Below are positions 23,837 to 49,100 of a DNA stretch of 64,000 nucleotides, piece after piece. The notes under the pieces were generated by a model. It was not told the DNA's origin and made no database searches. It saw nothing but the letters and a program-made list of their open reading frames with translations. Origin of the DNA: Iphione sp. A-MEVVRFRX5 (Eukaryota); contig OZ320313.1 in NCBI GenBank assembly GCA_976226885.1, positions 32,116,001 through 32,180,000 on the forward strand. The letters are read 5' to 3'. Every line of letters starts with the position of its first letter. Within the stretch, counting starts at the first letter, position 1. Made by a program: the position numbers and the translations under genes.

Positions 23837-25262
23837 ATGGATGACAGAAGCACTATAGTACATCCTACTCCAGTTTATGTCAGCCCACCAGTTAACGCAA
23901 CAACCCACGCAGATTCTACACGTAAGTATGTGATGAATACTAGACGCAATACAACATCATAGTTTCTTTAGAACCATAAAGAATTCTTCCGTTTCGATTG
24001 CTCTCGAAATAATCCACAGTAGCCAACGACACCAGTTGTTATTTAATGTAGTAGTGTTTTATGATGAAGACTTCCTGTCATGTCGACTACGACAACAACA
24101 TCATTTACTATTTGCCTGAGACGAATTGTACACTCGAAATAGATTGTCTAACTCATACATTCATAATTCCAAAATTATTGAAATACTTGTTTATTGTTTT
24201 TGTTAGTCTGTTCCGTAAACTAAGATCAATAGACTTGTTCAAGCACTCAGAATTGATCAAACTAAGACAGAGTACATACGACTAAGACATGTTATCTTGA
24301 GATTTACCCTTTAGAACTTATCATGTCAATTTGTTGCCGAATATCTAATTATAAACTGAAAAAAAACGTACTATTTTTCTGCAGAAGTTTAAAGTTAGTG
24401 AAACTAACACTTATTATTATCTATTAGGTGTTTAAGTAAATACTATGATTCACACATAAATACTTGACTATTATGCACATTGGTATTCATCTTTTCAGGT
24501 GGTGCATCAAGCGACCAAATGCAAATCACAGTGACAACGTCCATAGCGAGAAATTGCACAAACTGTAAGTTATATTTCAATGTGAACATGATTTTGTAAT
24601 ACTTCTTCGACCATAGCCAACATACAGTTATTCATGTAGGAGTTGTCTAGTTCTAATTTTCTTTAAGTAAATAAGATGGACCTGAAAATAACTTGCACAA
24701 ATATTAAACGTCTTAAATAAGGCAATCTCTAACAACTAAAGTAAAAGTTTTATCACATTCAAACGCCAAGAACTAAAACATTGAAGCCAAGTTTCTTGTA
24801 ACCTGCGATTGATCCTTACCAGTTAACTACACCTAACAGTTGTCACAGTTGTTAGTGCAGCAAAATTGTTATACATTGTTAATTTTTTTCCTAATTTTGA
24901 AATACAGCAAACAATTTACAGGTTTATTGTATGTATTTGCAGATGACAACGTTCGTTTACTTAACGAACTTGTACAAACCTTATCAACGGACGTTCTTCA
25001 CTTGCGGATGACGGTATTGAATCTTCAGAAAAAAAACAGCTACTTAGAAAGCCAAATACAACAGATGAACCAAGAGGCGATCGAACACCATAACGCTATT
25101 AATTATTTACTAAATGGCCACGACAAAACAAAGCAGTCGCTCTCTAATGTTGAAACAGACATCACGGCTATAAAAGATGCACAAAAGTCGTTCGAAACCC
25201 GGCTTTCGGCTTCATGTTCTCGAAATCCTCCTATCGATTTAGCTTGGGAAGATGAATGCTGA
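23837..25262 (+). CDS. Spliced gene B, about 156 aa, C-terminal coiled coil; paralog of gene D
   Basis: Exons 23837-23921 (MDDRSTIV..., GTAAGT), 24499-24564 (ttttcAG, GTAAGT, 66 nt) and 24943-25262 (tttgcAG) join in frame into ORF 24840-25262. Confidence 0.8.
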
Positions 25263-27189
25263 ACTGTATAAACCAGTTATGTGTCAAATGCTTGTACTAG
25301 TCATATAATTGACTCTATTACATTCATTTTGTCCGTTAAAATCAGTGTTATATTTGTGTGTTGTATTATTGTCTTTGTTCTTATACATATCCAAGTATAT
25401 GAATACAGGAAGACAATCGGCACAGTTAGAACCGTTTGATTATAGTAGAACAGTAGTTTATTTGTAGTCGTGTATACTTTATGTAGACATGATAGTACAA
25501 CTCACTTGTAATGGTACTGCGTTTATGTTTTATTAACTAAATCATCTTTAAACTTTTGAAGCTGTATTACATGACATGAGTTGCTCATGTATTTTTATAA
25601 GCACAAAAAGTGTGTAACACTAGGTTCAAATGAACAACTATTTACAATACAAAAAATATTAGTTTCTTACTGATATATTCTAGTCGAGCGATATTTTGCA
25701 AGAACTGAACTGTCCTTACATAGTATTTGACTGTCATTGACATAATCGGAAATAATATAAATGTACATGAACATACGATTTTGCATAAACATTAAATACT
25801 GAATATATATTCAGAGATCATCTAATTCCCAATCGGCTGTGTTGTGTTGGTAGGCACTGTTAATGTCGCAATTGACAATATCACTTGTTTGGCCTATAGC
25901 GATAGTGTCTTAAAAATGATACAACAAACTGATTTACTTGACTCATTATTTGAATAAAATTAGATTCCTCATAAGACCGTTATTATAGTTATTTTATTCT
26001 CTGAATGGTTTAGAGTAGACTAGCAGTCGTAATACAAAATCCAAACAACATATTAGATTAGTTTCTTTCAGTAGAAAATTGGTACGCTTCTCACAATAAG
26101 TTTGTATTTTAACACATGTTTTAAGATGTCTGATATAATCAGTTTATAAAATTGACGGATACATAACTATAGTATATAAAGTTTTTAGACATTCACTACA
26201 ACTTGCCTTTTAAAACATTAAGATAAATTCGATGGTCGTTAGGTTGTAACCATTTATAGATACGTACTAAATTATTTGAATTTGTACAACTACAACTTTC
26301 GAACAAAGTACAAACATTCACCCTACATATGTTGTATAAAACTGTCTGACTTGTACGGATGTAACTATTAAATAAAGAGAAAACTTCAACCTATTGTGTT
26401 CTGTCTACCTAAGTTGTATTTACTATAACAAAAATTAAAGCAATTCCTATGGATTAAATAATCTGAATTTAACTAACATATTTACTGTGTTTTGTAATCA
26501 ATAACACATTCGGATATTGAATTATCACAACTTATTTTTAATGATTGATTTTAATCAGTTTTTACTATTTCCTACACAATTCCAAAAGTTTTTCCAAGTT
26601 AAGTTATATGCCATTGTCTTGCCACATTTCAGAACAACTAGTACTACTGCCAGGTTCCATACTTATTGCTGATTAACCGTTATTCAATATAATTTCATGG
26701 GCACCAATTCATTAGACTTTTCTACAAATAAACCGTATCAAGCTAGTATTTCTGTTTGAAAAATACGTTGAAAACATACCAACTTATAAGAACTCAAAAT
26801 GTTTAGTATTTTCAACTTCACCGCCTAATACGTACTACTTTTATCCGTGTTCATTATTAGCTAAGCATGTAAAGCTATTTCACAAATTAGTGAAACACGT
26901 GGCCAACACAGTTCACTTGCAATCTTATCTCCTCACTTGTGCGCAACACATCCGTTTAAACTTAACGTAACTGCATACACCATCATACCATCGGTCTGTT
27001 CCGTATGGTCAGTCTGAAACTTCTTCTACAAACACATATTAACGCCTTCTGCACACAATAAAACCGAACACCATTCTCTGGTCACCCAACCTCCTGTTCT
27101 TATCAGTTCAGTTGTAAACTTAGCGTCTCAGTATACACCAGCGTAGGGATGTACCATTTCTTTGTTTCTTGTATGAATATTCTATAAAC

Positions 27190-27730
27190 ACAGCGACATC
27201 TCTTATCTTGTCAATGAACTACACTCGGCCGGTCAGTCACCACACCGCCTACGTCCCGGCAGGCACACCATGTCCTGTCACACTGTCGTTTGGGCGTATT
27301 CTGCAAACACGACGCGTCACTTATCTTCTGAGCGAACTACACTCGGTCAGCCAATCACAACTCCGTCTGCGTCCCAGCAGACGTGCCACGTTCTATCACA
27401 TTGCCACTTGTGCATATTTATTACACTACCCATAAAAAACGGTGGCCGAAAGTAGTCCGGTCATGGTGGCTGACATATGTGGCCCTGCGGTTTTACGAGA
27501 ATTAGTATCAATACGCCTGTGTCCACTCAGGCAGAACGGAAGGCTGTAAAATACTATCCCTCCGCCTGATAAGGCAGGCGCCGTAGGCGCTTGTCTACAA
27601 ACACAACGACATCACTTATCTTCTCGACGAACTACTCTCGGTCGGCCAATCACCACTGCGCTCGCATCCCGGCAGGCATACAACGTTCTGTCAGACTGTC
27701 GCTAGTGATGGCTCTACCTATATAAACTCT
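27190..27730 (+). promoter_or_regulatory. CpG-rich promoter island for gene C with a triplicated about 95-bp module
   Basis: Three degenerate copies of cttatctt...gaactac(a/t)ctcggtc(a/g)gccaatcac...cgtccc(g/a)gcag (about 27195, 27315, 27610). CCAAT at 27351 and 27646, TATATAAA at 27719, ATG at 27843. Confidence 0.55.
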
Positions 27731-27842
27731 TTCGGCTGGAAACACACTTCTTTCATCCACCGTTCGCCATCGCAGTTCACTTGAATTAACTGAAATATTG
27801 GACCCACAGTTTTTCACCGGAGGTTCCTCAAAAACTGGGAAA

Positions 27843-30080
27843 ATGAACCAACATTTCCTCAAACTAGAATCTCTACAAACTCACTCCAAAGGTAAGATTA
27901 TAAATGCTGAGGCAACAAGATTTTTATTAATTTAGCGTACTTAAATATTATAACAAATTGTACAGTGTACTTTTACGAAACCCCAGCTCATAACTGAACT
28001 AGCTACATATTTCACAATATTTAACGTGTACATCCACACAAATTGTACACTACTTCTCGTGAACAAACCTAATCAGCAAGCACCTAGGAACTGCTCCACC
28101 GACATTTACCTTTGATGTGAACCTTACATAACTAGACACTATTAATACATCAATTAGTGACAAATTCAGTTCATGACAATATGAAGTTAACCACACTTTC
28201 ACTCTCTACTATGACCGCGACATTCATTCACTTGTTCCTGGAAAAACATCAATTTTTCCTAAGAAGTTTACGTCGTTTTTCTCAACTAAAACGGAACCAT
28301 TACTTGAACATCGAATACGTATTAACGCATACTGATTACATCTACTATATAAAACTATAAACTTAAAATAATCCGGTAGTTAGCAAATCTCACCCAGATG
28401 TAAAAATTTACGAAATTTTCTATTACTATACTTTTGTATGTGCAGTCATTCATAACCGAGAGCGGGCGTTCTGTATTCGAGCTTAGAACCACCAGTCCCG
28501 GCCGTGCGACTTCTCACATGCCTACATATGTCTGTTCTTCACATTTACTGACGAAATCTTACAAACCTCGGTACCAAAGCCAAAAACCGAACGGTTTCTT
28601 GAAATGCAGGCAAATAAGTCTACGTTAATATGTACAGGAACAAACATTTGAACTTCTTTTTAACACCATTCTTCATTTTCCATTGTAGAACCAGATAGTT
28701 TCTCTGACACCGACCACGAAGCCACCGACCACGGTTTCTTGACGCACCAAACTTTCCAACACCAAAGCGACAGTCAGCGTATCTATCGCCAGAGCAACAA
28801 CAACGACAACGTCCGCAACCAAAGCATACACCCCAGTTCATCTGACATGGACAAGGACACCGACTACCGCGTTGTGAGACGCGAAACTTTCCGGCACCAA
28901 AACGACCGCGAACGCATTCATCGCCATAGCAACAACAACGACGAAATTCAACACCGAAACATCCGACATCAAAACCACCATAACAACAACAGTAAGTTTC
29001 AACAAACTAAGTAACAAAAGTTTCATTCAGAACCTATAGGCACACGTTGTTTTCGCGAAAAACCTATTACAAACATCAAAAAATGTTTCTTAATTCTACT
29101 GTTGTAAAAGTCTAACAACTTCTCAGAATACAAGTTATCTACTACAAAAACTAAATATTTTAAAGAATTTAATATGATTAGTTTGCCACAACTTTTAGAA
29201 CAAAAACGCCTATGGATATTGTTAATATGCAGTTCAAAATTCTACTTCTGTCAACCTTTACATTATCCACAGTACTTCATAATTTATAATACCTAATGTC
29301 TACTTGCTCTACTGCAGATGATTACGAGCTAGACGGAAACAACTCGCGTCAAAACCAACATGTTCATGCTGTCGACAACAACATACAGAACCAACCCAAA
29401 AACAAACATAGTAAGTATAAACAATCCTGCAACACAGTTCCAACACTTGCACAATGATATAGCTTCACTTTCGTTATACGTTGCTGAAACCTAATCTTGC
29501 TCTATTATTTTGTAACGTGGTTTTCTACATAAATGAAACCTCATGTATTTTTACACAACACATTTTTTTACAGAAACAAAGTGAACAAGAACTAGTTAGT
29601 ATAAACTCACAAAAGTTGTTATATTTTACAGATTGTTGCGGCCGACAAGACAACCAACTCTACAAGCACATTAGTGAACACATACATATGATGAACACGC
29701 GTGTCAATGAACAAGATAAAACTCTGGATAAAATACATCGCAAACTAGAACAGCAACAGGAACGAAACCGTGGCTTAGCCTTCAAACTACAAACAACGGA
29801 ACAATCTGCGCGCGTACTGGCACGAGAGAACAAGCGGCTTCAAGTACGACTCGACCTGTGGACTCGACACTTGCAGTCAGAACAACGGTTCAGACGGCAG
29901 TGGAGACAAAAAACGATAAGGACTGTGCAGAATGTTTTCGCAGAGAAAGAACAACATATTAACCATCTTCAACTCAAAACTGATGCGTTACGGCAGAGAG
30001 AACATGCTCGAAACAAACAGATTTTGCGTATGCAACTACAAATTATGGATCTTGTTCATCGTACAGAACAAAATGTTTAG
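27843..30080 (+). CDS. Spliced gene C, about 297 aa, His/Gln/Asn-rich N-half and long C-terminal coiled coil
   Basis: Exons 27843-27891 (GTAAG), 28689-28991 (303 nt, GTAAGT), 29318-29410 (93 nt, GTAAGT) and 29632-30080 (ttttacAG) join in frame with no stops, uniting ORFs 28739-29014 and 29481-30080. Confidence 0.8.
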
Positions 30081-33000: not shown

Positions 33001-34583
33001 AACCTTCTGAGAAGAGCACAGAGCACACATATCTTATTTTGTAAACCCAAGAAAACACTGCTTAATAGAACTACTTTCAGCCTACTTCCGGCAGCCGTTT
33101 TAAAAGAGATAGGGTAACTGAACTTTAGTTCTTGTAATTTATATTAAGGCTCTTTATTTGTAATAACACTACCTTATCACTCGGTTCACTCAAATCTCGT
33201 AAACAAAAGCATTAAGAACTACATGCTTGTTTTAAAACTCCTAATACAATACTTGTATAAGTATTTACTATTTTGTGCAATTACAGTAACATTAAGTTTC
33301 ATCTTTCGCTTAACTATTAAATCTGCGAAATATATACTTAATTTCGTACAACACTAAACTGCTAATTATTGACTGTTTACATTCATACTATCTATTAATA
33401 ATTCAGCACTTTAACAGTTGTCACTTAAACAGTAACAAATTCGCCAAAATGTATATCTTAAAATATTGTTTTCGCTTTTTTTGATATATATTTTTTACAT
33501 TATCCTTAACAAAAGTAAACTACTATATAGTAAACATCAATACTTCAAGTAACACAAAAGTTGATTGAAAACTTTTATTCATAAACTTTCAAAAGTAGTC
33601 TACTTGAACTTATAAACTAAAAACTTAAACACTAAACCATGATACAACCGGCGATACATACGTAATCGAATGTTAAACAGACTGATATACCAACTCAAAC
33701 ACCACTGATTGCTTTCATATCAAGTTTTACATAATTCTAAATGAAGTAAACTCCAGCTGAACACTTCATTATACTACACATCCTTTTCAGTACCACAATA
33801 TTTCCATTACCACTGTCCATATAACTAGTACATGTTCTTGCATAAACACTCGTACCAATTTTGTATCTATGTAATACAATGTATCACACACAGCCACACT
33901 TGTGCACAATCCTTGGTGGATATTAGTATGTTACTTAGATGCACACTTGTTTCAGCAGTTATACTACTGTTCGTTGAGCCTCTATGTTGTAAAACACCTT
34001 ACAACTCCTACTAAAATACACAACTCTAAACACTCACTACTAAACACTCACTCTAAATAACCATAATACAAAACTGTTACATAGTACATAACTTTACCTA
34101 AAACGCTATTATGTCAACAACATTATATATAGTTTCTTAACATATTACCACTTGTTCTCATTAATTTTTGTTTAATTGTGTTCTATTTATTTTCGACCTA
34201 CGCTACACACCCAAATTAGGTGGATGTTCTTTATTCTCCAAAAATTATACAAAGATAAACTTTAAAACAAATTGACTTATGCCACACTCATATCACTTGT
34301 CGCTAAAAAGTCTAATACACTTACAGGCTAAACATATGTAATCTAACTAAACTTTGTTACTTCTAATTGTAATCATAAACTCCCACCTTAAAGCTGCTAT
34401 AACCTTTTTGGTTAACTGTTCGTCTAAACCTTATACTTTCCACTAATACAAACACATTTTCATATGAACTGGTATACACAACAACCTGCTTTGCATCCCC
34501 ACTTCGACGTCCTGACATCGGTGTAAACTGCGTTACAAACAAATACAAACCAAACTGTATTATCAACACTTTACACAGTTATC

Positions 34584-36751
34584 TTACTTCTTTTTACTTT
34601 TCTTGCCTGGTGTCGCAATTTGTTGCTCTGAAGTTTTTTCACATGCCTGCCGTTTTGAAGTAGTTCCACGCACGTTGCTTTCCGAACAGCTACTACTTCC
34701 ATCAACTGAAGACAACATCTGTGAGCTATCACTCGCACCCGCAGTAACCACTTCGGCACTCTTTACATGAACATCACTAGGAACCTTAAGCGATATATTT
34801 CTAAGCTGTTCTCCCTCGATTTGCCCATCCAGATAGAACGGAAGATACGGAATAATGTCGTTGTCTGTTGTCAATGGCGCTTGAAGAGCATCCCGCAATT
34901 CGCTTTTCAACACCCATAAGTATTTGCGAATATTTACGACATCACACGACAACCTCCAACTGTCTTCTGTTTCTTTCCCAATTCCATCAATTTTAATCGC
35001 AGCCGATGCTCCACATTCTCCGCCTGTCATCAACTGTACAAATAAAGAAACACAATATGATTACACTACCTATATAAAATGTTCCCTAAAAGTAGTCCAG
35101 TCATGGAGGCTGACATATATGGCCCTACTTTCTACAATCATAGTCAATATTCCTACACCCCTCTGTTCAGTCAAGAAAAACCGAGGGTTGTAGACTTGCA
35201 TGAGGGGTCACAAAACAACGCACTATCTTACAATTCTCTCTCTCTCTCTTTCTCTTTCACTCCTCTCTATCTCTCTCTTGTTGTGTATAAAATACAATTC
35301 TCCATTTCTACGACTTCGCACAACCACTTAGTTAACTTTTATCACATCAAAACTAAAACAAAAACACAAATGCAACCAAATACATCTACTCACATATCTG
35401 AAACCTATGTATTTTGTAGATCTTGTCTAAACTATTTACCTTATATCTTTAAACTAACCAATTCAATACATTGTTTTTACTCGAACAACACCTCATCTGA
35501 ACACTAACAATGTGTTTCTAAAAAACCTTACCTGTATTTCATCTGGATGGTTCACTGTAGCTTCGAAACTTTCTGAGTAACTGTTGTACTTGTAGACAAC
35601 ATTCCGAAAACGGTACATCCTACCAACTTCAAACGTCATAGTCGCAGCTGCTCCCCACACACTGACACCAATGGTCTCTTTGCCATCAGTTATTGTCAAC
35701 TCCCGGATATATTTTTGGCCTCTTGTTGTTGAAACAGTCCTTAACTGCGCAACCTTTTGAATAAACAACAACAGAACATTAACATTGATATTACTAAGTT
35801 TTCTCTCACTTGTAGTTAAATCCACATATAATACAGCAACAGATCGCACAACTTATTTTGATACTAAAAAGTTCTTTACACATCGCTTAAACTGTCTTTA
35901 CGCTGATAGTAATTGAAACTTCTTCAACTAAAAAATAGTGCCAGCAGATTAATACAAAAAACATCTTCCATGTACAAACTTACATTCAATAAGTTTCCCG
36001 AAAAGGATACGGTTTCAGTATCCGATAACTTCATCACCTCCGATACAGTCTTCATAGGCACACCAGTAGTGTTGTCACTCTTGAACAAATCAATAGCATT
36101 GACTTCTTGTTCATTCGATATTTCCAATGGAGTAGCTCTGAAACATAATATCAACACCATGAAACTTATTACTTTTAACATAGCACTTTATACAATTCAG
36201 GAAGGAATTTGTAACCAATGCGACAATATCAAAACCCAACTACAAAACCACTGAAACTTTTACTATTCCGATTAATAAATGCGTCACTTCACAAACATGT
36301 CCACTAGTTTACAACCAAAACATTCCTATCAAATTACTATGAGTTATATTGCATCCACGTTATTCAATTAACGATACCAAAGTTTTCCGACAAAAACGAA
36401 ACAGACAAAACCTATTGCAACTTACTTTGAAATTGTAGTGCCTTTGAGGATTTTCACTTCACCACATTTTACGGCAAAGTCTTTCAGAATAACGGTTTGT
36501 CCTTCTTCGAAGTCCACCTTCACGTAGGCATGTCCGCACACGACACCGCTACCATCAGCCAAGACAAACTTTCGTCGAAGAATAGAAACCGAGTTCTTGT
36601 CTGGCCCAAAGGCCAGCTCGCCTCTGTCTTCTTCCAATTTCACAACAACGCACGTCAATTCTTGTGGAACGTTCCAAACATCGTTCAAATCCGCAATTGC
36701 AATTGTTCTTTGCATTGCTTTAACTGGTGAACGTGCAGCCGCAAAAGCCAT
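34584..36751 (-). CDS. 4-exon OB-fold ssDNA-binding protein (RPA70-like), about 383 aa
   Basis: Exons 36751-36426 (GTAAGT, phase 2), 36137-35984 (GTAAGT, phase 0), 35753-35532 (GTAAGG, phase 0) and 35033-34584 join in frame (1152 nt). OB signatures: RRKFVLADGSGVVCGHAY...FEEGQTVILKDFAVK and VSFSGNLLN|VAQLRTVSTTRGQKYIRELTITDGKETIGVSVWG...FEVGRMYRFRNVVYK. Basic C-terminal tail PGKKSKKK (NLS-like). Confidence 0.85.
35061..35126 (+). repeat. About 66-bp dispersed homolog of 27421-27486, inside intron 3 of the OB-fold gene
   Basis: ttacactacc...aaagtagtcc(a/g)gtcatgg(a/t)ggctgacatat(a/g)tggccct occurs at both sites. Confidence 0.8.
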
Positions 36752-36843
36752 CTTCCAAACTGTCAACGTACTGACTAGAATTACCCGCCAGTAGCAGATT
36801 TTGAGCACGTTAACACTGAACTAATCCATTCGGAAAGATCTAC

Positions 36844-37090
36844 TTATATAAGGCCACACTTGATAAGCTAATAGCAGCTTACTGACCAATAGAAGCACTC
36901 TGTTTTTCGAACATCTGCCTCGCTCGTGATTGGTTGACCTGGGAATGATGTCATTTACTTAATATATGCAAGCAACATTGCGACGGCACCAGGTTGTTCA
37001 ACTCGGTACTCCCCATTAGTATTCAAACCACACCTCCTAAACCAATAGCAGTACTGCCCAACTAACAGCTGATTCTGATTGGTTGATGTA
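36844..37090 (-). promoter_or_regulatory. Promoter of the OB-fold gene
   Basis: TTATATAA at 36844-36851, about 95 bp upstream of ATG 36751. CCAAT/ATTGG boxes at about 36886, 36929, 37042 and 37078. Confidence 0.55.
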
Positions 37091-37420
37091 CTAAATAACC
37101 TTATTCAATGAGGTAACTTCAATCCTACATTAACACATGCACTTGTATTTTATTCATGTATATACGTTTCTAACTGCTACTATTGAACCATTCTTCCGCC
37201 ATACAACTCATTGTTCATGATGACAACCAAACAACACACTGTATACAATATGGTTTTTACAAACGCACACTGTAGCGAACTCCTAATTTGATGTTGTTCA
37301 ACCAAATTCATTGAAAAACAGAATGTACCACAACTACATCAAACACAAATGCCATTTGTTTACTACGACCACTACAATGTTTCTCATCACATGAACACCA
37401 AAATATACTGTTTATGTTTA

Positions 37421-40400
37421 CTAACACAATTCTTGTAAAACTCCAGTAATTGCATTATGGTATGAAAAGGGACAATAACTAATGGACATTTGTACACTCA
37501 TTTGAGTTAAAAACCAGTCTAAACATGTGTTTCCATCCGTAGTAGCTTCTGTAACCTTTTGTTGAACTCCGTATGTCGTTTCCAACCAATTTAAAAAAAC
37601 TAAATTCCGTTCTTCAAACAAACACATATTTACGTCCCCTACTATAACTAACGAATTATTCTTTGGTAGATAAGGAACAGCTGTAAGAAGTAAAGTTTTG
37701 AATGACTCGATTGATGCACGTGGTGCCTTGTATACAATAAAGATTGTTAGCTCAAACTCACTACTACATCTTAAATCCACCAGCAAATATTCACAATTAT
37801 TATACCGGTAACCGTAAGTATTTACAATGGTCAAATCTGTTCTTACATATACAGCTAAACCATGAGACGGCCGAAAAGATGTATTGAACTGTGGTTCTGA
37901 TGCAAACACATTCTTAAAACCAATAATAGGAAACTTTGCAGGACTTTCATCCCTCTTAAAACGTGTTTCAGCGAAACATAACACAGTACTACTCAAAAGA
38001 TACTTATCACAACAAACGCTGCGAAAATGACCAAATAACGATTGAGCGTTTAAAAAAGTGACAGCAAAAGCATTTCGAATTATTGGGATATCTACAAAAT
38101 TCAACGCGACCTGACGGTCTTTTCTTAAACGTTCCATTTCTTTAACAACTCGATCATCCACTGTCACTTTAGTTCTATCAAATGATAGTAAATACAATCC
38201 ACTCAAACTGCGCAGTCTACTAAAACAAACATAATACGTATGAGCGTTAATTGGTCGCGACAACTGAACCGCAACTGAAGACATGGTAGTACCTTGCGCT
38301 CGGTGTACAGTACGTCCACTGCACTGACGCAGCGGAAACTGAGTGCGGTACACTTCCCCCTTCAGTACAAACTTTCTACTAACAACAAACAAAGGAGTCC
38401 AACTAGGGTCGTGGTTCACAGCAAACCTTTTGTGGTACTTCAACCTCTGATTCTTCCCAACATTGGGATCATCGAACTTCAACCACAGAATACTTGGTTG
38501 AGAAATTCCATCAAAATATTGAATTTTTGTCAAAGTACCAGTAGTTCCGTTTGTCAAACCATCCTCCGTATCCATATTATAAGTTATGTCGTACCGTAGA
38601 CCAACACCTACTTTTAAAACTTTCATTAGATCGCCAGTGTCTTTCAAACTTAAACTAGTCGAGGCGATACACTTTGCAATAGATTCTTTCAAGTTATGAT
38701 TCAAAATAACATCTTTTGCATAAATACAAGTTTTTTCAGAAATGCAATTTTCAAAAGCTAAATCATTATGTCTATTTACGCTTTCGTTTGTTGAAAATAA
38801 ATAGTCAGTACCACTTGGTATCTCTTGTACATTGCCAATGATTCTACTTTCAAGCATCTTGTAGTCTTGCTCCGTTTGCAAACCTTCTCTTAACCGATTC
38901 AAAAGCTGTGCAAAGTTTTTGTCGTTGGCTTGACGAACAATAGTCTGTAATTCAAATATTTGGAAATGTTCTCTCCATAAATTTGGAGCCAATCTTGATA
39001 AACCACTTGTATCTAAAAATATCCAACTATCTTTGACAGGCTGCAGTTGATACAAGTCACCAAAACAAATAATATGTATACCTCCAAACAATTGTTTATT
39101 GCCTTTGAGTCTTTGTAGTTGTATATGTATTCGTTCAAGCATGTTTGCTCCAACCATCGAAACTTCATCGACCAATAAGACTTTCAGATCGTTAAATTTC
39201 AACAACTGCGTATTAAGGGTACTGTCTGACATATCTACTATTTGCTTATAATTCCATACCTGCAAGGCACTGTGGATAGTTTTCCCACCTATCAAGAACG
39301 CAGCTTTAGCAGTTGGTGCTACACACAAAACTGAGAGAGCCGAAACTGACATATTACTCGCCAAGTTAAAATGACGTTGTAAGCTATGGTATATTGTTTT
39401 CAATAACAATGATTTCCCAACCCCAGCACCACCTGTTATGAACAAATGCAATTTATTCGCATCGTACAGCACCTCTTTCATGATGTGTTTATAAATTATT
39501 TGTTGCTCACAGGTGAGCAAAGCAACATTATCCAACATTTCACCACGGCTCCAAATGCTATCAATAACTGATGGACGCACACACACATGACCATCTTTTT
39601 CAAAATTTACATCAGTCTGCGGATCATCTCTTACCATGAAAAACAAACAATCATCTTGAATGTCCATTTCCTCTTTGTCACGACTATTTTCATAACCTGT
39701 ATTTGGTGCAACTGTACTTGTGTCAACATTTTTACTTTCTAAATCATTTATTTGTTTTAACAAATTATGAATTGGCTGTTGCACAAACACACAAAACTTT
39801 TCTACTATTTGTTGTTGAACAATACTTTCTAAGTTATGAAACAATTGCGTAAACTTGCTATCTGGTGGTAGTTCTGTCCTCCAAGGTAAACATAACAATA
39901 GCATAATACGAATATATTGTTCTTCGTTATTTTCAAGTGACGGACAATTGAATTTCAACACAGCCCGCTTTACACGTCGTTTATATACTTTAGAATTTGA
40001 ACGATAAAGAATAAAACTGCCTCCTTGCGCATCATCCAACCCAGAAACATTCTTACTTGTACTTTTACTTAAGGTAATGAGAGAACAATAGTCTCCTAAA
40101 CACCATGCTTCGAAAAATGCAGGTCGTGCTTGGTATAGTACCATTTTATCATCAACAAAAATATCTGTAGAATTATCTTCTAACTGTTCTAGTTGACTGT
40201 CGGTTTTCAAGATACGCTGTCTTTCGGAAGCAATTTTCGTATCTAAATATATCACACTAACACTTGTTTTGGTCATTGACATACCTAAAAGCATGTAAAT
40301 ACACTCCTGCGCACTTATTTCAGTACTATTCATAAAACACTTACCTACTTCTTTTAATTGTTCTTGCAAACTACACCGTTTGGATTTCGATTCTTTTAAT

Positions 40401-43400
40401 ATTTGCGACAGCAAAACACTTAAACCACGATGTTGTTTGTTTATATAACTTACAATATAAACTGCACAAGCATACGGATCAATAACATAAGATATATCAT
40501 GATTTGCTTTCCAAACCCCTAACAAATTTTTCATATAAGGATTTACGCGTATGTCTTTCGGTTCTCTTTTCAAAAACACTTTCCATGATGTTAATGAAGT
40601 CCGAACTGCACTAATATACCTCTCTTCGGTTAATTCCAAGTATTTTAAAAAATCGTCAAATGAAAAAGAACTTAATTTATCTTCATCATTCATAAGTTCA
40701 CAAACACGTCGAAAATCACGAATTGCTACCAAATCATCCTTCAAAGGCTCTAACACTTCAGTTTTTCGCATAGGAAAAACAGGAAAGTGAAACCGACAAA
40801 TAGCCTGGCCACGTTTTCTACATGTTCGAGAATGTTTATGCGTCTGTAGATCGATAAATTTCTTGTTGCTGTCCTCCACAGAACTTGAACAACTCACAAA
40901 CTTATCAATATATTCAGCAACTTCAACACTATTCTGCTTATCTGTGCTATACCGAGGATTATTCTTGCACCAAACTAACATGTGAACATGAGGACTTCCA
41001 CGATGTTGAAACTCCACTCGGTAGAAATAATCTTCCACTTCACCTATGGGATTTGCCTTACTCTCTAAAACTCCTCTCAAAAACTTATCAAAGCGAAAAT
41101 CAAAATATCTGGCACAAGTTACCGGATCACTACTAACTAACTGAGCCCTCTTAGTCCATGAAAATTCTTCTATTTCCTCATCTGTATACAAAACATTATC
41201 TATCAAAAGACCAAGTGTTCGCAGCAATGGTATCCAGTACAGATCAGCAGCAGACAAAGACATAAACCACGTAGGAAACCCAAGTTGTCTAATCATAGCC
41301 ATAACATTACTTTGTGCTCGCTCAAAATATTGTGGAGTATTCCTCAACCTATTATACATATAAAACCCTTCATCAGATGTTCGAAGCCTCTCTCTGCTTT
41401 CGCGTGTTGCCACGTCAATCTTGGAATAATGACCTACATTTCTACTACGACGAAGTGCAAAACGCGATACTGCCTTAATCAAAAGACTCTGATATTTTTT
41501 ATATTTGAAGAAAATATTTTCCAAATTTGTTGCGATACGTCTATCAACATTTCGCAATTCAAATTTACACACATCAGAATAACGCATCGAACAATTCACA
41601 TACGGATTAATTCCACCATACAAATGAGGATAAGCCATATACTCTCCATTTGCGTCATAAATTAAACTCAATGGCATATTGTATTCACCCGGAGCAATAT
41701 CGAAAAACAAATCCCCAGTATGAGCATCTAGAAGACTTTGCATTTGCAAATCCTTCTCAGTGACATCAACTTCAGAGAAGTTATCTTCATCACTATCGCT
41801 ATCATCATTGTCAAGTTCCTTAGTATTACAACTTTCGCTGTAACAACGCTCATTGGCTGCTTCATCTACAGATTCAGCTGTCAAACTTGGTCCATCGTTC
41901 ATCAATGCATTAACTGTTTGCGTTAACCAATCGTAATCAATGATAACATTATCTTCTTTATACAAAGGACTATTCTTCACTAACCACTCTAGAGCCTTCA
42001 ACACATTAACAGGGCGCACATTGAATTGCCTGTATGCATGCTTGTTTGAAAGTTTTCTCTTCAACCGAACACATGTAGTACCTGCCGTATTTATGTACCT
42101 CGGCAACTGAACAACAGTATCCTCTACACGTGCCAAAACATTTACAACAGGTCCCTTCAAACTGTATTGAAAACCACGGGGTAAATAACGTATTTGCATA
42201 AATGCGAGACGCCGAGCTACAAGACGTGCCTCATCGACAGTAATTTGTAACTCATGGGGAACAGTCGGCAATATAAATCCGTTCATGTAACAGATACGAG
42301 GTAAACGACGGTCACTAATCGCTTTGGAACATGTTTGACAAATATATTTGCATTCATTTTGAGACTTACCACCTACTACATGTTGAATATGATAGTAAAT
42401 TTCTGAAGTGACTTCCCGAACACTATGAATAAACCACACCTGGCTACACATGCAACAACAATAATGTGGCCCTTCTTCAATGTTAAGAAAAAAACTCTTG
42501 ATACACTTGTCTAACTCATTTGCGGTTGAATCTGTATCAGAAGAAACAACATTACCATTTGTTTTCTTGCGAACTTTTGCATTCTGTGAATTAACTACCC
42601 TGATAGACCGCTTCTGCTTCCTACTCTTTTCACTACTACAGTTTCCAATTATTTGATTTAAAATGTCGGCTTTATCATTGACCACTTTAGTTTTACCACA
42701 AACAGCCTTTTTTCTACCTTTGGTATGTTGTAACGCTACTAAGTTAGGTACAAGCATACCATCACTGTTTATCAACACACTTCTGCAGTTCGGTTCTTTC
42801 AGAGACTTACTTTTCTTGACACTTCTAGTTGTACTACACATGTTCTTCCTTTCAGATTGTAGCCCCGTTTTTTCTTGACTGTTACTACTCTTTTGGACAA
42901 ATTCTTTTACACGAGCACTTCCATTTCTGCTTTTCTTCTGATCGGATTTAGTCTTACTAAACGTCTGAGAAATGCCAGTTGTTTTGATAAAGCCAGAAAT
43001 ATTACCGTTCCGATCCGTTAACCTGTTTCCTTGTACCGATTCACTTACATTAGATCTACATGACTTTTCTGTTGTATGAAACATATCCTTACCTACCCAA
43101 CACCTCAAATTCTCTATCACTTCCATAGCAATGAACCGGTTGGGATAAATAGAATTTATATCTACAAATATTTCACAGAACGTATCAGACAATCCATTTT
43201 GGACCATATGCACCACAGAAATTTCATACTGGAATTGTTGTGAACTATAATATAACTTTTCTATATGACCAATAAGTTCATAAAAATCTTCAAAACATAT
43301 GTGAACAGCTGTACCTTCTGCCGACGGGAAACCTTTTTTAGAACGCGCATGAGAATCAAACATATAGTAAACACCAGTTCTGCAATATACTGCAATAGAC

Positions 43401-43780
43401 AAATGCTGTGCAACAAATATACAGAACGGACTAATCGAGAATGCTTTCACAAACGCAAAATATATGGAATCGCCTTTTGGTATGTGTACACCAACAAAAC
43501 ATTTCACCACATCAAAAAAAATCTTTCTACTATTTACAATCAATAATTGTGGCAACTCACAAGGAGTCAATTGCAAAGCAGTTACTCTCCGGCGAATTTG
43601 TGTATACAGAAAGTCGCCAAAGTCGAGGACATCATCTACATGTCTACTATTTACAATGCCATTACAAAAAACGAACACATACAACAAACAGCCGGCAGCA
43701 ATAGCGGTACATTGATTGCCACGACCACTGTGATTATATACACTACTATTTTGACTCCGAGAACCTTGTAAAACTTTCAT
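37421..43780 (-). CDS. Helentron (Helitron2/HLE2-type) Rep-helicase-endonuclease polyprotein with N-terminal herpes-tegument-type (peptidase C76-like) cysteine protease
   Basis: Uninterrupted 2,129-codon frame, first ATG at 43780. Protease: GSRSQ...GNQC and YYMFDSH. Cys-rich CCMC...CQTC. Rep: LGFPTWFMSLSAAD, YRVEFQHRGSPHVHMLVW (HUH at about 40982), YACAVYIVSYINK. PIF1: ITGGAGVGKS, APTAKAA, DEVSMV, FGDLYQLQPV, QFPLR...TVHRAQG, YVCFSR. APE: FLNAQSL, FAETRF, VYKAP, GDVN, LDWF, SYH. Confidence 0.96.
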   Translation of the reverse strand: MKVLQGSRSQNSSVYNHSGRGNQCTAIAAGCLLYVFVFCNGIVNSRHVDDVLDFGDFLYTQIRRRVTALQLTPCELPQLLIVNSRKIFFDVVKCFVGVHIPKGDSIYFAFVKAFSISPFCIFVAQHLSIAVYCRTGVYYMFDSHARSKKGFPSAEGTAVHICFEDFYELIGHIEKLYYSSQQFQYEISVVHMVQNGLSDTFCEIFVDINSIYPNRFIAMEVIENLRCWVGKDMFHTTEKSCRSNVSESVQGNRLTDRNGNISGFIKTTGISQTFSKTKSDQKKSRNGSARVKEFVQKSSNSQEKTGLQSERKNMCSTTRSVKKSKSLKEPNCRSVLINSDGMLVPNLVALQHTKGRKKAVCGKTKVVNDKADILNQIIGNCSSEKSRKQKRSIRVVNSQNAKVRKKTNGNVVSSDTDSTANELDKCIKSFFLNIEEGPHYCCCMCSQVWFIHSVREVTSEIYYHIQHVVGGKSQNECKYICQTCSKAISDRRLPRICYMNGFILPTVPHELQITVDEARLVARRLAFMQIRYLPRGFQYSLKGPVVNVLARVEDTVVQLPRYINTAGTTCVRLKRKLSNKHAYRQFNVRPVNVLKALEWLVKNSPLYKEDNVIIDYDWLTQTVNALMNDGPSLTAESVDEAANERCYSESCNTKELDNDDSDSDEDNFSEVDVTEKDLQMQSLLDAHTGDLFFDIAPGEYNMPLSLIYDANGEYMAYPHLYGGINPYVNCSMRYSDVCKFELRNVDRRIATNLENIFFKYKKYQSLLIKAVSRFALRRSRNVGHYSKIDVATRESRERLRTSDEGFYMYNRLRNTPQYFERAQSNVMAMIRQLGFPTWFMSLSAADLYWIPLLRTLGLLIDNVLYTDEEIEEFSWTKRAQLVSSDPVTCARYFDFRFDKFLRGVLESKANPIGEVEDYFYRVEFQHRGSPHVHMLVWCKNNPRYSTDKQNSVEVAEYIDKFVSCSSSVEDSNKKFIDLQTHKHSRTCRKRGQAICRFHFPVFPMRKTEVLEPLKDDLVAIRDFRRVCELMNDEDKLSSFSFDDFLKYLELTEERYISAVRTSLTSWKVFLKREPKDIRVNPYMKNLLGVWKANHDISYVIDPYACAVYIVSYINKQHRGLSVLLSQILKESKSKRCSLQEQLKEVGKCFMNSTEISAQECIYMLLGMSMTKTSVSVIYLDTKIASERQRILKTDSQLEQLEDNSTDIFVDDKMVLYQARPAFFEAWCLGDYCSLITLSKSTSKNVSGLDDAQGGSFILYRSNSKVYKRRVKRAVLKFNCPSLENNEEQYIRIMLLLCLPWRTELPPDSKFTQLFHNLESIVQQQIVEKFCVFVQQPIHNLLKQINDLESKNVDTSTVAPNTGYENSRDKEEMDIQDDCLFFMVRDDPQTDVNFEKDGHVCVRPSVIDSIWSRGEMLDNVALLTCEQQIIYKHIMKEVLYDANKLHLFITGGAGVGKSLLLKTIYHSLQRHFNLASNMSVSALSVLCVAPTAKAAFLIGGKTIHSALQVWNYKQIVDMSDSTLNTQLLKFNDLKVLLVDEVSMVGANMLERIHIQLQRLKGNKQLFGGIHIICFGDLYQLQPVKDSWIFLDTSGLSRLAPNLWREHFQIFELQTIVRQANDKNFAQLLNRLREGLQTEQDYKMLESRIIGNVQEIPSGTDYLFSTNESVNRHNDLAFENCISEKTCIYAKDVILNHNLKESIAKCIASTSLSLKDTGDLMKVLKVGVGLRYDITYNMDTEDGLTNGTTGTLTKIQYFDGISQPSILWLKFDDPNVGKNQRLKYHKRFAVNHDPSWTPLFVVSRKFVLKGEVYRTQFPLRQCSGRTVHRAQGTTMSSVAVQLSRPINAHTYYVCFSRLRSLSGLYLLSFDRTKVTVDDRVVKEMERLRKDRQVALNFVDIPIIRNAFAVTFLNAQSLFGHFRSVCCDKYLLSSTVLCFAETRFKRDESPAKFPIIGFKNVFASEPQFNTSFRPSHGLAVYVRTDLTIVNTYGYRYNNCEYLLVDLRCSSEFELTIFIVYKAPRASIESFKTLLLTAVPYLPKNNSLVIVGDVNMCLFEERNLVFLNWLETTYGVQQKVTEATTDGNTCLDWFLTQMSVQMSISYCPFSYHNAITGVLQELC

Positions 43781-45062
43781 TGTAAAGTACAGCTGTTCTT
43801 TTTTCAACACTTTATATTCAATGTCAAAAACTTAATACTTTCCCATTATACCACATAAAAGAACAATAACTTTTCTCTATATTTTTATCCGTCCTATTAT
43901 TTGGTTATCGTCTCACTGATAGCACACCAACACAGTCTTTGATTGAAAAAAGCCTACATTTACAAATCAACAATAAACTAATAAACTTGCGAACAACCAA
44001 CCTTTTCACATAAAATTGTTTCACAACATGTGGTTTTACTCTGTCATAACCCCAAACTATACTTATTTAAATACAACGCGTACACAACAACATCAACTTT
44101 TGACGTCGCAGTAATATTAACCTCCTTCACATTACACACCTATCCTCTTCTTTCTGAATTGCTCTCCACAAACCCAACCAACTATAACACGAACACTACC
44201 GACCTCGGCTGCCACCATGAACAATGCGGACTCTGTGCTAACACCCACCCTTTTTATATAAAACCTACTTGTCTAATCTTCAGTTGCCGACACAAAAAAT
44301 GTTCATCAATACAAACTCTCTTGTTGTTGTAGAAACATCCCCCTATGTGTCATACCGACCACAACGCCATAAAGTAAAAAGACCAGAACATCAAAGTACT
44401 CTACTATCTGTCACGGAAATCTTACACTATAAAAACCGACACAGCGTACAACGCACAAATAAACACATAAACTTAAAAGCGGCTAAGAATCCACAAACCC
44501 AAACCGACCGGAACCAATCCCTACCATCTTTTGAAAAACATTTAAAAACTATTTTTCTTATTCCAATACCCACATACTTCGTTAAAAATGATACAAACTA
44601 ATACCATATTAACAAACAAGTCTACAAAATCTTCTATAACAGTTTATTGACTAAATTCGTATACGCTTCCACCAATGCTTAATTTGCTTTTTACTTCTTC
44701 TAATTGCTTTATTAGCGTTCAGGTTTTCCTCATTCAAACTATTAGCATTCCTTTTAAGAATAGTGCACAGTAACACTAAACATTAAACACGAAAATAATA
44801 AACTATTTCTATTAAAACAGTTACGTTTGACAGCGAAACCCTAAAATTTTGCAATTAAACTTATACTTTAACCATACTTATAAATAGTTGATAAATTCAC
44901 ACCGATTCACTCTAAAAAATATTCAACTACACACACACTCTTTCCATTCTTATACATAATGTTTGAATTATTAAAACACAAAACTTATATAGTTAAAAAC
45001 AGATATATTCCCACCCTCTTTCAAGTTTTCAGTCATCACACTACGCTCTTACATATCGTTTA

Positions 45063-45090
45063 TGTGATTGGTCAGTTTTGAACCAATCAC
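45063..45090. promoter_or_regulatory. Inverted CCAAT pair in the divergent interval between the transposase and gene D
   Basis: gTGATTGGtcagttttgaaCCAATCAc lies 200 bp upstream of ATG 45290 and about 1.3 kb upstream of the transposase ATG on the other strand. Confidence 0.45.
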
Positions 45091-45289
45091 AGTTCACGAA
45101 CATCTTTGCACACGGTACTGTTCCGCTCTGGTCGTTTGGACCACGCCTACCACTCTCTACTTACTTGTTCGCAGCATTTCTCGCCGAGTACCGCTACCAC
45201 ATACTAATTGTACTATTTACTACCACAGTCGTATACAAGAATCTTACAATAAGCCATTAACGGTTTATCACCTTGGCTTCTATACTAAT

Positions 45290-46912
45290 ATGGACATCCG
45301 ACGAGTTGTATGGAAACCTAAACAGATACTTACCAAAGACACAGGTATGTACTAATTACCCGCAAACTACACACTATACAATGTTCCAAGTACTATTTCT
45401 GCGAACTTCCAAACTACACTCATATAAACACATCGTCCAATATTTTCAATGCGGTTCGCATCAGCCGCTACAACGCCGTAGTCTTCACACATATCGCCTT
45501 ACACACTTAGACAGAACACAACGAACACACGTACAACCAGTGAAGATATTCTTACCAGCAAACAATACTCACTTTATATAAACCATACATTCAACTCGTA
45601 TGTGATTACTTCTTCCATATTTCCAATGTATTCCACTTATACGTAATGTTTCATCTCGGACTATATCTTTGTTGATTTAATTCTCTTTCAGCCACTTGGA
45701 CTACAAACGATGTGCCTCTACTGCCCACCAGTCAGGACCCACAAACTATTACTACTTGTAAGTATGGACACTATAGCAATCTTTAAAGGAAACTTCTTTA
45801 GATTTCTAAACATATATCAGTCTTAGTCTTTATTATTACAACTGTGTCCTCATAGCACTCCACTAAACTCTATCCACCTATTAACTTTTGTTGGTTCAGA
45901 AGACCCTATGCTACAGTATTACCTTAGAATATACAACACCTCCAACCAAAACAATTTGCGCCCAATTATTTCCGTCCTTCACATGTTTCCCGGCCTCACC
46001 TCCTTCCTATCCCTAAGAATGCCTGCTGCTACTATCCCCTAAACCTAAAGCACTATACCCGCGTGTGAGAACCATCTACACCCGCACCGCTAAAAGTAAG
46101 ATACAGCATATCCCGCCGAAGCAGTTGCCTAAGTTATACCCATGTATCTACCCAAATGTACGGACCTTCTACACCTACCACGTTGTCAGTAAACTACGAC
46201 ATGTCCCACCGGAGTAGTTACCAAATTATATTCATATATTTCTGTTTTGATACTAAGTCAGCCTATAGATAACACAATTGGCGCATCATCAACAGAGGAC
46301 CCCAAAACAAGCAACCTTAACCACAATACCACTCTGATGACTCCCTTAGTCTCTCTCTCTACCTACCATGACTCATACCAAACCACAGTTGTTTAATTTT
46401 AATATTAACTAAAAAAAAATGTTCAATAAGTCATCCTCTTCCTCAGGTACTTGGACGCAACCTGATGCGAACACAGTCGACCTGACATGCTACCATGTCT
46501 TCACAAACACTTCATAACTATACAAATAACCAATAATACTCCTCATATTGTTCTAGTGCCTACCGCAATAAATGAACGCCATTCTACAACCTCAAACTAA
46601 TTTTGCACTTTACTTCCAGTTCAACCAGTTCCGATCCCGGCTGACGCAATCCAGAATGTACTAGCAGAACTCAGCTATCTTCGAACGATCACATTGAATC
46701 TACAGAGTGAAAACAAGTTACTCCAACAACAACTACACCAGGCAAATGATGAAATCGTACACTGTCGTCACGCAATAAGAAGCTTGCAACATGACCAAAG
46801 CATGACAAAACAGTCTTTCGGAAACTTCCACTTGCAAGTTGAGGCTCTAGTTCGCCATCAAAGCGTTGTCGATACCCACATTAATACGCTCATTTGTTCG
46901 CAAACTGAATAA
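45290..46912 (+). CDS. Spliced gene D, C-terminal coiled coil; paralog of gene B; middle exons uncertain
   Basis: Exons 45290-45344 (MDIRRVVWK..., GTATGT), 45692-45757 (tttcAG, 66 nt, GTAAGT) and 46620-46912 (cttccAG) are frame-compatible. A further exon may start at 46448. Last exon LSYLRTITLNLQSENKLLQQQLHQANDEI...AIRSL...TKQSFGN aligns to gene B. Confidence 0.65.
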
Positions 46913-48649: not shown

Positions 48650-49100
48650 TCACTGACAGTTTAACGACCGCCGGCTTTATCAATTCGCCCGCCTTATCGC
48701 TAGGGACCTGTTGCGCAATGTTTCTGACGGTACCGTGATGTCCCCAGGCCGCGCCCTACCTGCCGCCTACTCTTCCATCAACACGGTATAGCTACAACCG
48801 CTACCTCAAATAACAAAGGCAACCGCTCGATACCACCGTGCAGATACACCAATCACGACCTATGCCCGCACGTGACAAACCAGTCCACTCATTTGCATAT
48901 CCGCAAGACCTGCCTACATCCGCATATCTTTTACTATAAATACCTAGCGCATCCATACCACCCACAACACTTCGTTTCCGACAGCCACCATCGCTTCATT
49001 TGCTACAAGCCTACACTCGAACGTTAACTTCAGACCGCTGTGAGAAGAAGTCACCGCCTCACTCACTATCACGCTGTCGCAACAAATTAACAAGTAAGTA
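48650..49100 (+). promoter_or_regulatory. CpG-rich promoter-like island with an apparent non-coding first exon
   Basis: CCAAT 48849, CACGTG 48869, octamer ATTTGCAT 48891, TATAAATA 48935, splice donor GTAAGT 49094. Confidence 0.55.

What the first reader, a model, noticed from the sequence alone, without database searches (positions are those of the whole stretch)
24943..46912. Paralogous coiled-coil exons 22 kb apart bracket the transposase (genes B and D)
Seen: VLHLRMTVLNLQKKNSYLESQIQQMNQEAIEHHNAINYLLNGHDKTKQSLSNVETDITAI aligns without gaps to LSYLRTITLNLQSENKLLQQQLHQANDEIVHCRHAIRSLQHDQSMTKQSFGNFHLQVEAL, sharing LR..LNLQ..N..L..Q..Q.N.E.....AI..L.....TKQS..N. Both genes also have a short first coding exon and a 66-nt second exon. 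Divergence with open frames suggests selection on the protein. This ties the two flanks of the transposase together.
Basis: seen in the sequence. Interest (0 to 1): 0.7.

Follow-up and report, generated by a model that had tools for sequence, protein, structure and literature searches.

The report
Old duplicated coiled-coil gene pair
Two small three-exon genes 21 kb apart are real, anciently duplicated copies of a rod-forming (coiled-coil) protein with no known relatives, and a much younger rolling-circle transposon (Helentron) lies between them, so the arrangement is an ordinary one.

Summary
Both peptides are on the + strand (24993-25172 and 46670-46849). They align without gaps, 24/78 identical, BLASTP E 8e-11. 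The Smith-Waterman score is 116 against 40 +/- 7.5 (max 78-84) for heptad-preserving shuffles, and against 31-47 for the two other coiled-coil ORFs in the window.

The two genes have the same structure:
- a short ATG exon (85 or 55 nt)
- a 66-nt exon 2
- a terminal exon whose acceptor sits at the homologous codon
- all introns in phase 1

DNA similarity is limited to the core of exon 3. Codon-position identity is 0.46/0.58/0.34, and only the shared frame is open. That indicates past protein-level constraint. dS is saturated, so dN/dS (at most 0.4-0.5) is only an upper bound.

The product is a disordered N-terminus followed by one roughly 90-residue heptad helix, probably a dimeric coiled coil. 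No relatives turned up in Pfam, PDB, 1.84 billion protein representatives, or metagenome and viral contigs. The source genome also seems to be absent from those libraries.

The "transposase" is an intact 2129-aa Helentron RepHel, far younger than the duplication. Most likely it inserted into an existing cluster, so the bracketing is positional. Helentron cargo status for gene D is not excluded, because the element's ends could not be fixed.

The parts
23837..23921 (+). Gene B, first coding exon (ATG, 28 codons + 1 nt, phase-1 donor GTAAGT)
   Evidence: Read from the sequence. Residues 2-10 resemble gene D's exon 1 at offset 0 (M-D-x-R-x-x-[IV]-x-x-P; shuffle p 0.006). No transcript evidence.
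24499..24564 (+). Gene B, exon 2, 66 nt, phase-1 introns on both sides
   Evidence: Acceptor ttcatcttttcag and donor gtaagt. This is the only GTRAGT donor between exons 1 and 3.
24943..25262 (+). Gene B, terminal exon: 105 codons plus stop TGA, heptad-repeat helix
   Evidence: AlphaFold2 predicts a single helix over residues 2-92, mean pLDDT 91. There are 0 stops in this frame and 7 in each of the other two.
45290..45344 (+). Gene D, first coding exon (ATG, 18 codons + 1 nt, phase-1 donor GTATGT)
   Evidence: Read from the sequence. The N-terminal motif is shared with gene B.
45692..45757 (+). Gene D, exon 2, 66 nt, phase-1 introns on both sides
   Evidence: Acceptor ttaattctctttcag and donor gtaagt. 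This is the only GTRAGT donor in the span. Its peptide similarity to B exon 2 is not significant (p 0.06).
46620..46912 (+). Gene D, terminal exon: 96 codons plus stop TAA, heptad-repeat helix; AATAAA overlaps the stop
   Evidence: There are 0 stops in this frame and 5 and 8 in the other two.
37421..43810 (-).
   Evidence: Pfam. 42-47% identity to OTU/Rep/PIF1/endonuclease proteins of bivalves, a hemichordate and holothurians. The FYR...VEFQHRGSPHVH motif visible matches the Helentron signature described in PMC4067079.
28689..30080 (+). Context: an unrelated gene between B and the Helentron, with His/Asn/Asp-rich exons and a coiled-coil terminal exon ending at 30080
   Evidence: Not related to B or D (SW 39 and 47, shuffle p 0.28 and 0.04).

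Best explanation
Genes B (23837-25262, 156 codons by my model) and D (45290-46912, 137 codons) are old duplicates of one host gene, lying in the same orientation.

Each encodes about 40-50 Ser/Thr/Pro-rich, probably disordered, residues from exons 1-2. The last exon then encodes a single uninterrupted amphipathic helix of about 85-90 residues with a regular 3-4 hydrophobic spacing. A conserved Asn sits at a core 'a' position in the shared LNLQxxN motif, and a conserved TKQS patch lies further along.

The most likely mode of action is a two-stranded, parallel, in-register coiled coil. This could be a homodimer or a B/D heterodimer. Its conserved surface positions (e/g and b/c/f) would bind a partner, and the variable N-terminal tail would carry regulation or targeting.

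The Helentron between the genes most likely inserted long after the duplication, into a + strand cluster of small coiled-coil genes. The bracketing then has no functional meaning.

Shown here: homology, parallel exon structure, past coding constraint, helix and heptad pattern, Helentron identity. Inferred: expression, oligomer state, partner binding, order of events.
For: Homology:
- SW 116 against 40 +/- 7.5 for heptad-register shuffles, and 31-47 for the other two coiled-coil ORFs of the same window.

Same gene architecture:
- phase-1 introns throughout
- a 66-nt exon 2 defined by the only GTRAGT donor in each span
- the exon-3 acceptor at the homologous codon.

Constraint:
- identity at codon positions 1/2/3 is 0.46/0.58/0.34, against 0.26 expected
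- sensitive blastn finds similarity only at 25016-25138 vs 46693-46815 and none in introns or flanks
- the shared frame has 0 stops, the other frames 5-8
- G is higher in D's exons (0.14-0.20) than in its introns (0.116), despite the strong local G depletion.

Structure:
- 77% hydrophobic residues at a/d against 20-25% elsewhere, in one register over 90 residues in both proteins
- 16 of the 25 identities lie outside the a/d core
- AlphaFold2 predicts one helix over residues 2-92, pLDDT 91.

Order of events:
- the RepHel ORF runs 2129 codons without a stop, so it has decayed very little since insertion
- B and D are saturated at synonymous sites, pS 0.70
- no RepHel remnant lies near B.
Against: - There is no transcript or protein evidence, and the splice models were made by eye.
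- No homologue was found anywhere, so constraint rests on a single pair.
- dN/dS cannot be estimated reliably because dS is saturated.
- Exon 2 similarity is not significant at the peptide level.
- The oligomer state is untested; only a single chain could be folded.
- The Helentron's ends are not determined. A 76-bp inverted repeat pair (35053-35128 and 48546-48621) encloses both RepHel and gene D.
Confidence: 0.7

Rival explanations
1. Gene D is carried inside the Helentron, as captured or long-term cargo, and is not a resident host gene. B and D are then related through transposon-mediated duplication.
For: - Helentrons are reported to carry extra ORFs and captured gene fragments (PMC4067079).
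- D lies 1.5 kb from the RepHel start, in divergent orientation.
- A 76-bp repeat occurs in inverted orientation at 35053-35128 and 48546-48621, enclosing RepHel and D (13.4 kb). A T-run abuts the outer edge of the 48.6-kb copy.
Against: - The 76-bp repeat has at least four copies in the window, also at 27413 and 15088, so it behaves as a dispersed short repeat. It is also far longer than the roughly 13-bp subterminal repeats described for Helentrons.
- Two collinear short inverted matches (37209-37298 and 44086-44226) would give a 7-kb element that leaves D outside.
- B and D share no intron or flank similarity, so there was no recent capture from B.
- No RepHel remnant lies near B.
Confidence: 0.08
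2. One or both copies are no longer functional: unexpressed or decaying duplicates whose frames are still open by luck.
For: - There is no expression evidence.
- There are no homologues in any library.
- D sits in a strongly G-depleted, repeat-rich region.
- The dN/dS upper bound is only 0.4-0.5.
Against: - All three exons of both genes keep an ATG, consensus splice sites, matching phases and open frames.
- The other two frames of each terminal exon hold 5-8 stops.
- Similarity survives only in the coding part.
Confidence: 0.12
3. The similarity is convergent or chance resemblance between unrelated heptad-repeat sequences.
For: - Coiled coils share composition and periodicity.
- Pfam gives only sub-threshold generic coiled-coil matches.
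- The five hits of the exhaustive search were spurious matches of this kind.
Against: - 0 of 5000 heptad-register shuffles reach the score (maximum 78 against 116).
- Real coiled-coil ORFs of the same window score 31-47.
- 16 of 25 identities lie off the hydrophobic core.
- The alignment offset is exactly 0 from the acceptor sites, with identical intron phase and an identical 66-nt upstream exon.
- There is 64% nucleotide identity over 123 nt.
Confidence: 0.01
4. Both exons belong to copies of a repeated element, for example a coiled-coil ORF1/Gag-like gene of a retroelement, and not to host genes.
For: - Coiled-coil domains are common in retroelement ORF1 proteins (general knowledge).
- The window is rich in repeats.
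Against: - There are only two copies.
- No reverse transcriptase, integrase or other element protein lies beside either copy.
- Similarity stops at the exon borders.
- Consensus introns are present.
Confidence: 0.03

Closest known systems
Lineage-specific ('orphan') tandem gene duplicates separated by a later transposon insertion
   Same: Same orientation, same exon-intron plan, similarity kept only in coding sequence, and a young mobile element in the intergenic space.
   Different: No third member or orthologue is available to date the duplication or show ongoing constraint. An unrelated gene also lies between the two copies.
Leucine-zipper type two-stranded parallel coiled coils (GCN4-like, with a polar Asn at a core 'a' position)
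   Same: Regular heptads over about 12 repeats and a conserved Asn at an 'a' position (residue 31 of exon 3) in both copies.
   Different: No basic DNA-binding region precedes the helix. The helix is three times longer than a bZIP zipper. Pfam bZIP_2 scores only E 0.27. The oligomer state is untested.
Pfam RasGAP_C (PF03836, C-terminal helical region of IQGAP proteins)
   Same: It is the best Pfam match of D's exon 3 (E 6.4e-5, 23.5 bits). B's exon 3 matches the same profile in the same register (14.4 bits).
   Different: Both scores are below the 26-bit gathering score. IQGAPs are proteins of about 1600 residues with other domains, none of which is present here. No IQGAP chain appears in the PDB profile search. 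This is most likely a compositional match.
Helentron (endonuclease-encoding Helitron-like rolling-circle transposon), for the element between the genes
   Same: Rep motif with the GSPHxH signature, PIF1 helicase, OTU-like protease region, weak C-terminal AP-endonuclease match. The relatives are Helentron-type proteins of marine invertebrates.
   Different: At most 47% identity to any protein in the library. The termini (subterminal inverted repeats, T-runs, 3' stem-loop) were not identified.
Helitron/Helentron gene capture
   Same: A host-like gene (D) lies next to a RepHel gene, and a paralogue (B) lies elsewhere.
   Different: Captured fragments normally keep DNA-level similarity to the parent, introns included, and are usually partial. 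Here D is a complete three-exon gene with no non-coding similarity to B.

Membership tests
Two-stranded coiled coil (structural class) | Heptad periodicity with hydrophobic residues at a/d over several repeats | tested here: met
   77% hydrophobic at a/d against 20-25% elsewhere, in one register across residues 1-90 in both proteins.
Two-stranded coiled coil (structural class) | Continuous alpha-helix | tested here: met
   AlphaFold2 on B exon 3 with D as alignment gives one helix over residues 2-92, mean pLDDT 91. This is a single-chain prediction only.
Two-stranded coiled coil (structural class) | Dimeric, parallel assembly | not testable with these tools
   No multimer prediction is offered. 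The conserved Asn at an 'a' position is suggestive only.
bZIP transcription factors | Basic DNA-binding region immediately N-terminal to the zipper; Pfam bZIP match | tested here: not met
   bZIP_2 scores E 0.27, 11.8 bits against a 22.3 cutoff. No basic cluster is seen in exon 2 or at the start of exon 3.
RasGAP_C / IQGAP C-terminal region (PF03836) | Score at or above the Pfam gathering threshold of 26 bits | tested here: not met
   D scores 23.5 bits and B 14.4 bits.
DMPK_coil (PF08826) | Score at or above the gathering threshold of 22 bits | tested here: not met
   B scores 19.8 bits over 34 residues only. D has no match.
Helentron (the intervening element) | Rep domain with the Helentron-type signature (F/Y-x-R ... 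ExQxRGSPHxH) | tested here: met
   Helitron_like_N E 1e-28. The motif is read in the ORF translation and matches the criterion quoted from PMC4067079.
Helentron (the intervening element) | PIF1-type helicase fused to Rep | tested here: met
   PF05970 E 4.9e-23.
Helentron (the intervening element) | C-terminal AP endonuclease domain | tested here: inconclusive
   PF03372 scores E 0.0016, 18.6 bits against a 24.5 cutoff, at residues 1942-2077. Many of its closest relatives carry PF03372.
Helentron (the intervening element) | Subterminal inverted repeats of about 13 bp, T-runs / TT target, 3' stem-loop | tested here: inconclusive
   Two candidate sets were found: 37209-37298 / 44086-44226, and the 76-bp pair 35053-35128 / 48546-48621. 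No second copy of the element was available to decide between them.
Helitron/Helentron-captured gene (for gene D) | Lies inside the element's termini | tested here: inconclusive
   The termini are not fixed.
Helitron/Helentron-captured gene (for gene D) | DNA-level similarity to the parental gene, including non-coding parts | tested here: not met
   Only the exon-3 core matches B, at 64% over 123 nt. Introns and flanks do not match.

The most novel reading that the evidence does not exclude
The coiled-coil gene is a long-term passenger of this Helentron lineage. Gene D would lie inside a 13.4-kb element bounded by the inverted 76-bp repeats at 35053-35128 and 48546-48621. Gene B would be either the host lineage it was taken from long ago or a domesticated relic. 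That would be a Helentron accessory protein of a kind not described before.
Probability: 0.07. Interest if true: 0.55.

Novelty: new member of a known kind. Interest (0 to 1): 0.27.

Why it matters
The finding gives a well-supported annotation for two otherwise unannotatable genes in what appears to be a poorly sampled marine-invertebrate genome. It defines a small undescribed coiled-coil family with a clear conserved motif set (LR-x3-LNLQ-x2-N, TKQS).

It also shows that the intact Helentron most likely sits inside an older gene cluster, which is useful for dating and delimiting the element.

It does not open a new mechanism. Tandem paralogues split by a transposon are common, and the protein's function remains a structural inference. 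It would matter more only if gene D proved to travel with the Helentron.

Tried and rejected
**Searches on the exon-3 peptides**
- Pfam gave only sub-threshold generic coiled-coil matches.
- The word search with B exon 3, which sees only proteins of 58-184 aa, found nothing.
- The PDB profile search found nothing below E 0.07.
- The exhaustive HMMER search with the two-sequence profile gave five hits. All are long repeat, TPR, PAS or bacterial coiled-coil proteins matched in 3-7 stretches, and I judged them spurious.
- Metagenome and viral contig scans found no relatives.

**More family members inside the window**
- An HMM of the pair against all stop-to-stop fragments found no third copy.
- Gene A's C-terminus and the 29-kb gene's terminal exon are not related to B or D.

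**Selection**
- dN/dS could be computed, but dS is saturated. The YN00 method failed.

**Transposon**
- tblastn found no RepHel remnants elsewhere in the window.
- A bacterial promoter/terminator scan, Rfam and a tRNA scan were uninformative.
- A TGATTGGT (CCAAT) motif count was not enriched, 7 against 3.4 +/- 1.9.

**Source genome**
- The word search and PDB search on ORF 21753-22409, meant to calibrate how well the source genome is represented, found nothing.

**Steps not run**
I reran it by reference.
Exons 1 and 2 are too short for the search tools.
- I did not run a fold search on the single-helix model, because matches to a lone helix are meaningless.


Full report
**Material**

The window has no N runs and 37% G+C. 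I do not take it for human. CpG is little depleted, with observed/expected 0.75-0.90. Its one recognisable protein is a Helentron Rep/helicase whose nearest relatives, at 42-47% identity, come from bivalves, a hemichordate, holothurians and a nemertean. The window's own protein does not appear in that library. An apparently globular 218-aa ORF from the window also finds nothing. The source genome therefore seems to be unrepresented, which weakens every "no relatives" statement below.

**Observation**

Both quoted peptides are present on the + strand, at 24993-25172 and 46670-46849. Each lies in a terminal exon:
- Gene B: acceptor ...tttgcag at 24943, stop TGA ending at 25262.
- Gene D: acceptor ...cttccag at 46620, stop TAA ending at 46912.

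**Is the similarity more than chance?**

- BLASTP of the two exon translations gives 24/78 identities without gaps, E 8e-11 with composition adjustment.
- The Smith-Waterman score is 116. Five thousand full shuffles give 31.8 +/- 6.0. Shuffles that permute residues only within each heptad register give 40.2 +/- 7.5, with a maximum of 78. None reaches 116, and the Gumbel p is about 3e-6.
- As a natural control, the two other heptad-repeat ORFs of the same window (the C-terminus of the 310-aa ORF at 16981-17913, and the terminal exon ending at 30080) score only 31-47 against B, D and each other.
- Sixteen of the 25 identities in the first 89 positions lie outside the a/d core. The match is therefore not a hydrophobic-periodicity artefact.

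**Gene structure**

The best ungapped alignment is at offset 0 counted from the first full codon after each acceptor (115 against 38 for the next offset). The last intron therefore sits at the homologous position, in the same phase.

Between exon 1 and exon 3 of each gene there is exactly one GTRAGT donor. Paired with the nearest strong acceptor, it gives a 66-nt open exon in both genes, at 24499-24564 and 45692-45757.

The first coding exons are 23837-23921 and 45290-45344. Both begin M-D-x-R-x-x-[IV]-x-x-P (shuffle p 0.006) and end in phase 1. The exon-2 peptides are Ser/Thr-rich but not significantly alike (p 0.06).

My models give 156 and 137 codons. They were made by eye and have no transcript support. 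The joined proteins were not built or searched, and exons 1 and 2 are too short for the search tools.

**Constraint**

- Sensitive blastn between the two loci, with flanks, finds only 25016-25138 vs 46693-46815 (64% identity). Nothing in the introns or flanks matches. Neutral sequence has been randomised since the duplication, while the coding core has been kept.
- Identity at codon positions 1/2/3 is 0.46/0.58/0.34, against 0.26 expected from composition.
- The shared frame has no stop in 105 and 96 codons. The other two frames have 5-8 stops each.
- The Nei-Gojobori method gives dN 0.70-0.77 and dS 1.7-1.9, a ratio of about 0.41. The Li-Wu-Luo (LWL85) method gives about 0.52. But pS is 0.70, close to saturation, so the ratio is only an upper bound and weak evidence on its own.
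- D lies in a region where the + strand is strongly depleted in G. Its exons keep more G (0.14-0.20) than its introns (0.116).

**The protein**

Both terminal exons show one heptad register over about 90 residues, with 77% hydrophobic residues at a/d against 20-25% elsewhere. The invariant Asn31 falls at an 'a' position inside LNLQxxN. The invariant TKQS occupies positions d-e-f-g.

AlphaFold2, run on B exon 3 with D as the only other aligned row, predicts one helix over residues 2-92 with mean pLDDT 91 and a disordered tail. Neither first-exon peptide shows a long hydrophobic stretch of the kind a signal peptide needs.

I infer a parallel dimeric coiled coil with a conserved partner-binding surface and a disordered N-terminal tail. 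The oligomer state could not be tested.

**Relatives**

None were found:
- Pfam gives only sub-threshold coiled-coil matches. The best are RasGAP_C for D (23.5 bits against a cutoff of 26) and DMPK_coil for B (19.8 against 22).
- The word search found nothing among proteins of 58-184 aa.
- The PDB profile search found nothing.
- The exhaustive profile search of 1.84 billion representatives returned five proteins. They are a TPR/NB-ARC protein, a PAS sensor and repetitive bacterial coiled-coil proteins, each matched in several stretches, and I treat them as spurious.
- Metagenome and viral contigs gave no hits.
- There is no third copy in the window.

**The element between the genes**

The 2129-codon ORF at 37421-43810 on the minus strand carries an OTU-like region, DUF6570, Helitron_like_N, PIF1 helicase and a weak AP-endonuclease match. 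It shows the FYR ... VEFQHRGSPHVH motif that PMC4067079 gives as the signature separating Helentrons from Helitrons.

An ORF of that length without a stop has decayed very little since insertion. B and D have lost all non-coding similarity. I therefore infer that the duplication is far older than the insertion. No RepHel remnant lies elsewhere in the window.

The element's ends are unresolved. Two collinear short inverted matches (37209-37298 and 44086-44226) would give a 7-kb element that leaves D outside.

**Verdict**

The pair is a real, old, constrained duplication of an undescribed small coiled-coil gene. Its position on either side of the Helentron is best explained by a late insertion into a + strand cluster of coiled-coil genes, and not by any functional tie. 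This is an ordinary genomic situation, with a modest residual chance (about 7%) that gene D is Helentron cargo.

Noticed in passing
window 26000-64000 (strongest 44000-64000): The + strand is strongly G-poor and C-rich over about 38 kb: GC skew -0.2 to -0.45, G about 0.10-0.12 against C about 0.25-0.28. Total G+C stays near 37%. The skew is weaker in exons and in the RepHel ORF than in non-coding DNA, and it builds up gradually from about 20 kb. I have no explanation.
   Followed up: partly
window 27413-27488 (+), 35053-35128 (+), 48546-48621 (-), 15088-15153 (+, weaker); partial copies at 28335-28355 and 49545-49578: A dispersed repeat of about 76 bp with sharp edges, starting ATTACACTACCTATATAAAAC, with T-runs outside two of the copies. 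One inverted pair encloses the Helentron ORF and gene D. It may be the end of a non-autonomous Helentron derivative, or an unrelated short repeat.
   Followed up: partly
window 37209-37298 and 44086-44226: Two collinear short inverted matches (20 nt at 85% and 24 nt at 79%) lie just outside the two ends of the RepHel ORF. They are candidate subterminal inverted repeats of a 7-kb Helentron. By my rough estimate they are only modestly above chance.
   Followed up: partly
window 16981-17913 (+): A 310-aa ATG ORF with a Ser/Thr/Pro-rich first half and a heptad-repeat C-terminal third. The layout resembles B and D, but there is no detectable sequence relation and no Pfam family.
   Followed up: partly
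window 28689-30080 (+): An apparent multi-exon gene with His/Asn/Asp-rich exons (28689-28993 and 29319-29411 by eye) and a coiled-coil terminal exon ending at 30080. It lies between gene B and the Helentron and is not related to B or D.
   Followed up: partly
window 21753-22409 (+): A 218-aa ATG ORF of globular-looking composition, 1.4 kb upstream of gene B. It has no Pfam, PDB or word-search relatives.
   Followed up: yes
window 45063-45091: A perfect 10-bp palindrome, TGTGATTGGT-(9)-ACCAATCACA, carrying CCAAT boxes in both orientations about 200 bp upstream of gene D's ATG. It is a possible promoter element. The motif is not enriched in the window as a whole.
   Followed up: partly
window 267-1184, 2511-3094, 6000-6829, 6989-7855, 56726-57486, 57605-58333 and others: There are many tandem arrays with periods of 29-313 bp. 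The 33-bp array at 6000-6829 creates the long minus-strand ORFs at 5941-6940, which are therefore repeat artefacts.
   Followed up: no
window about 3745-4366 and 4371-4998: A direct duplication of about 630 bp, with translated fragments 96-100% identical.
   Followed up: no
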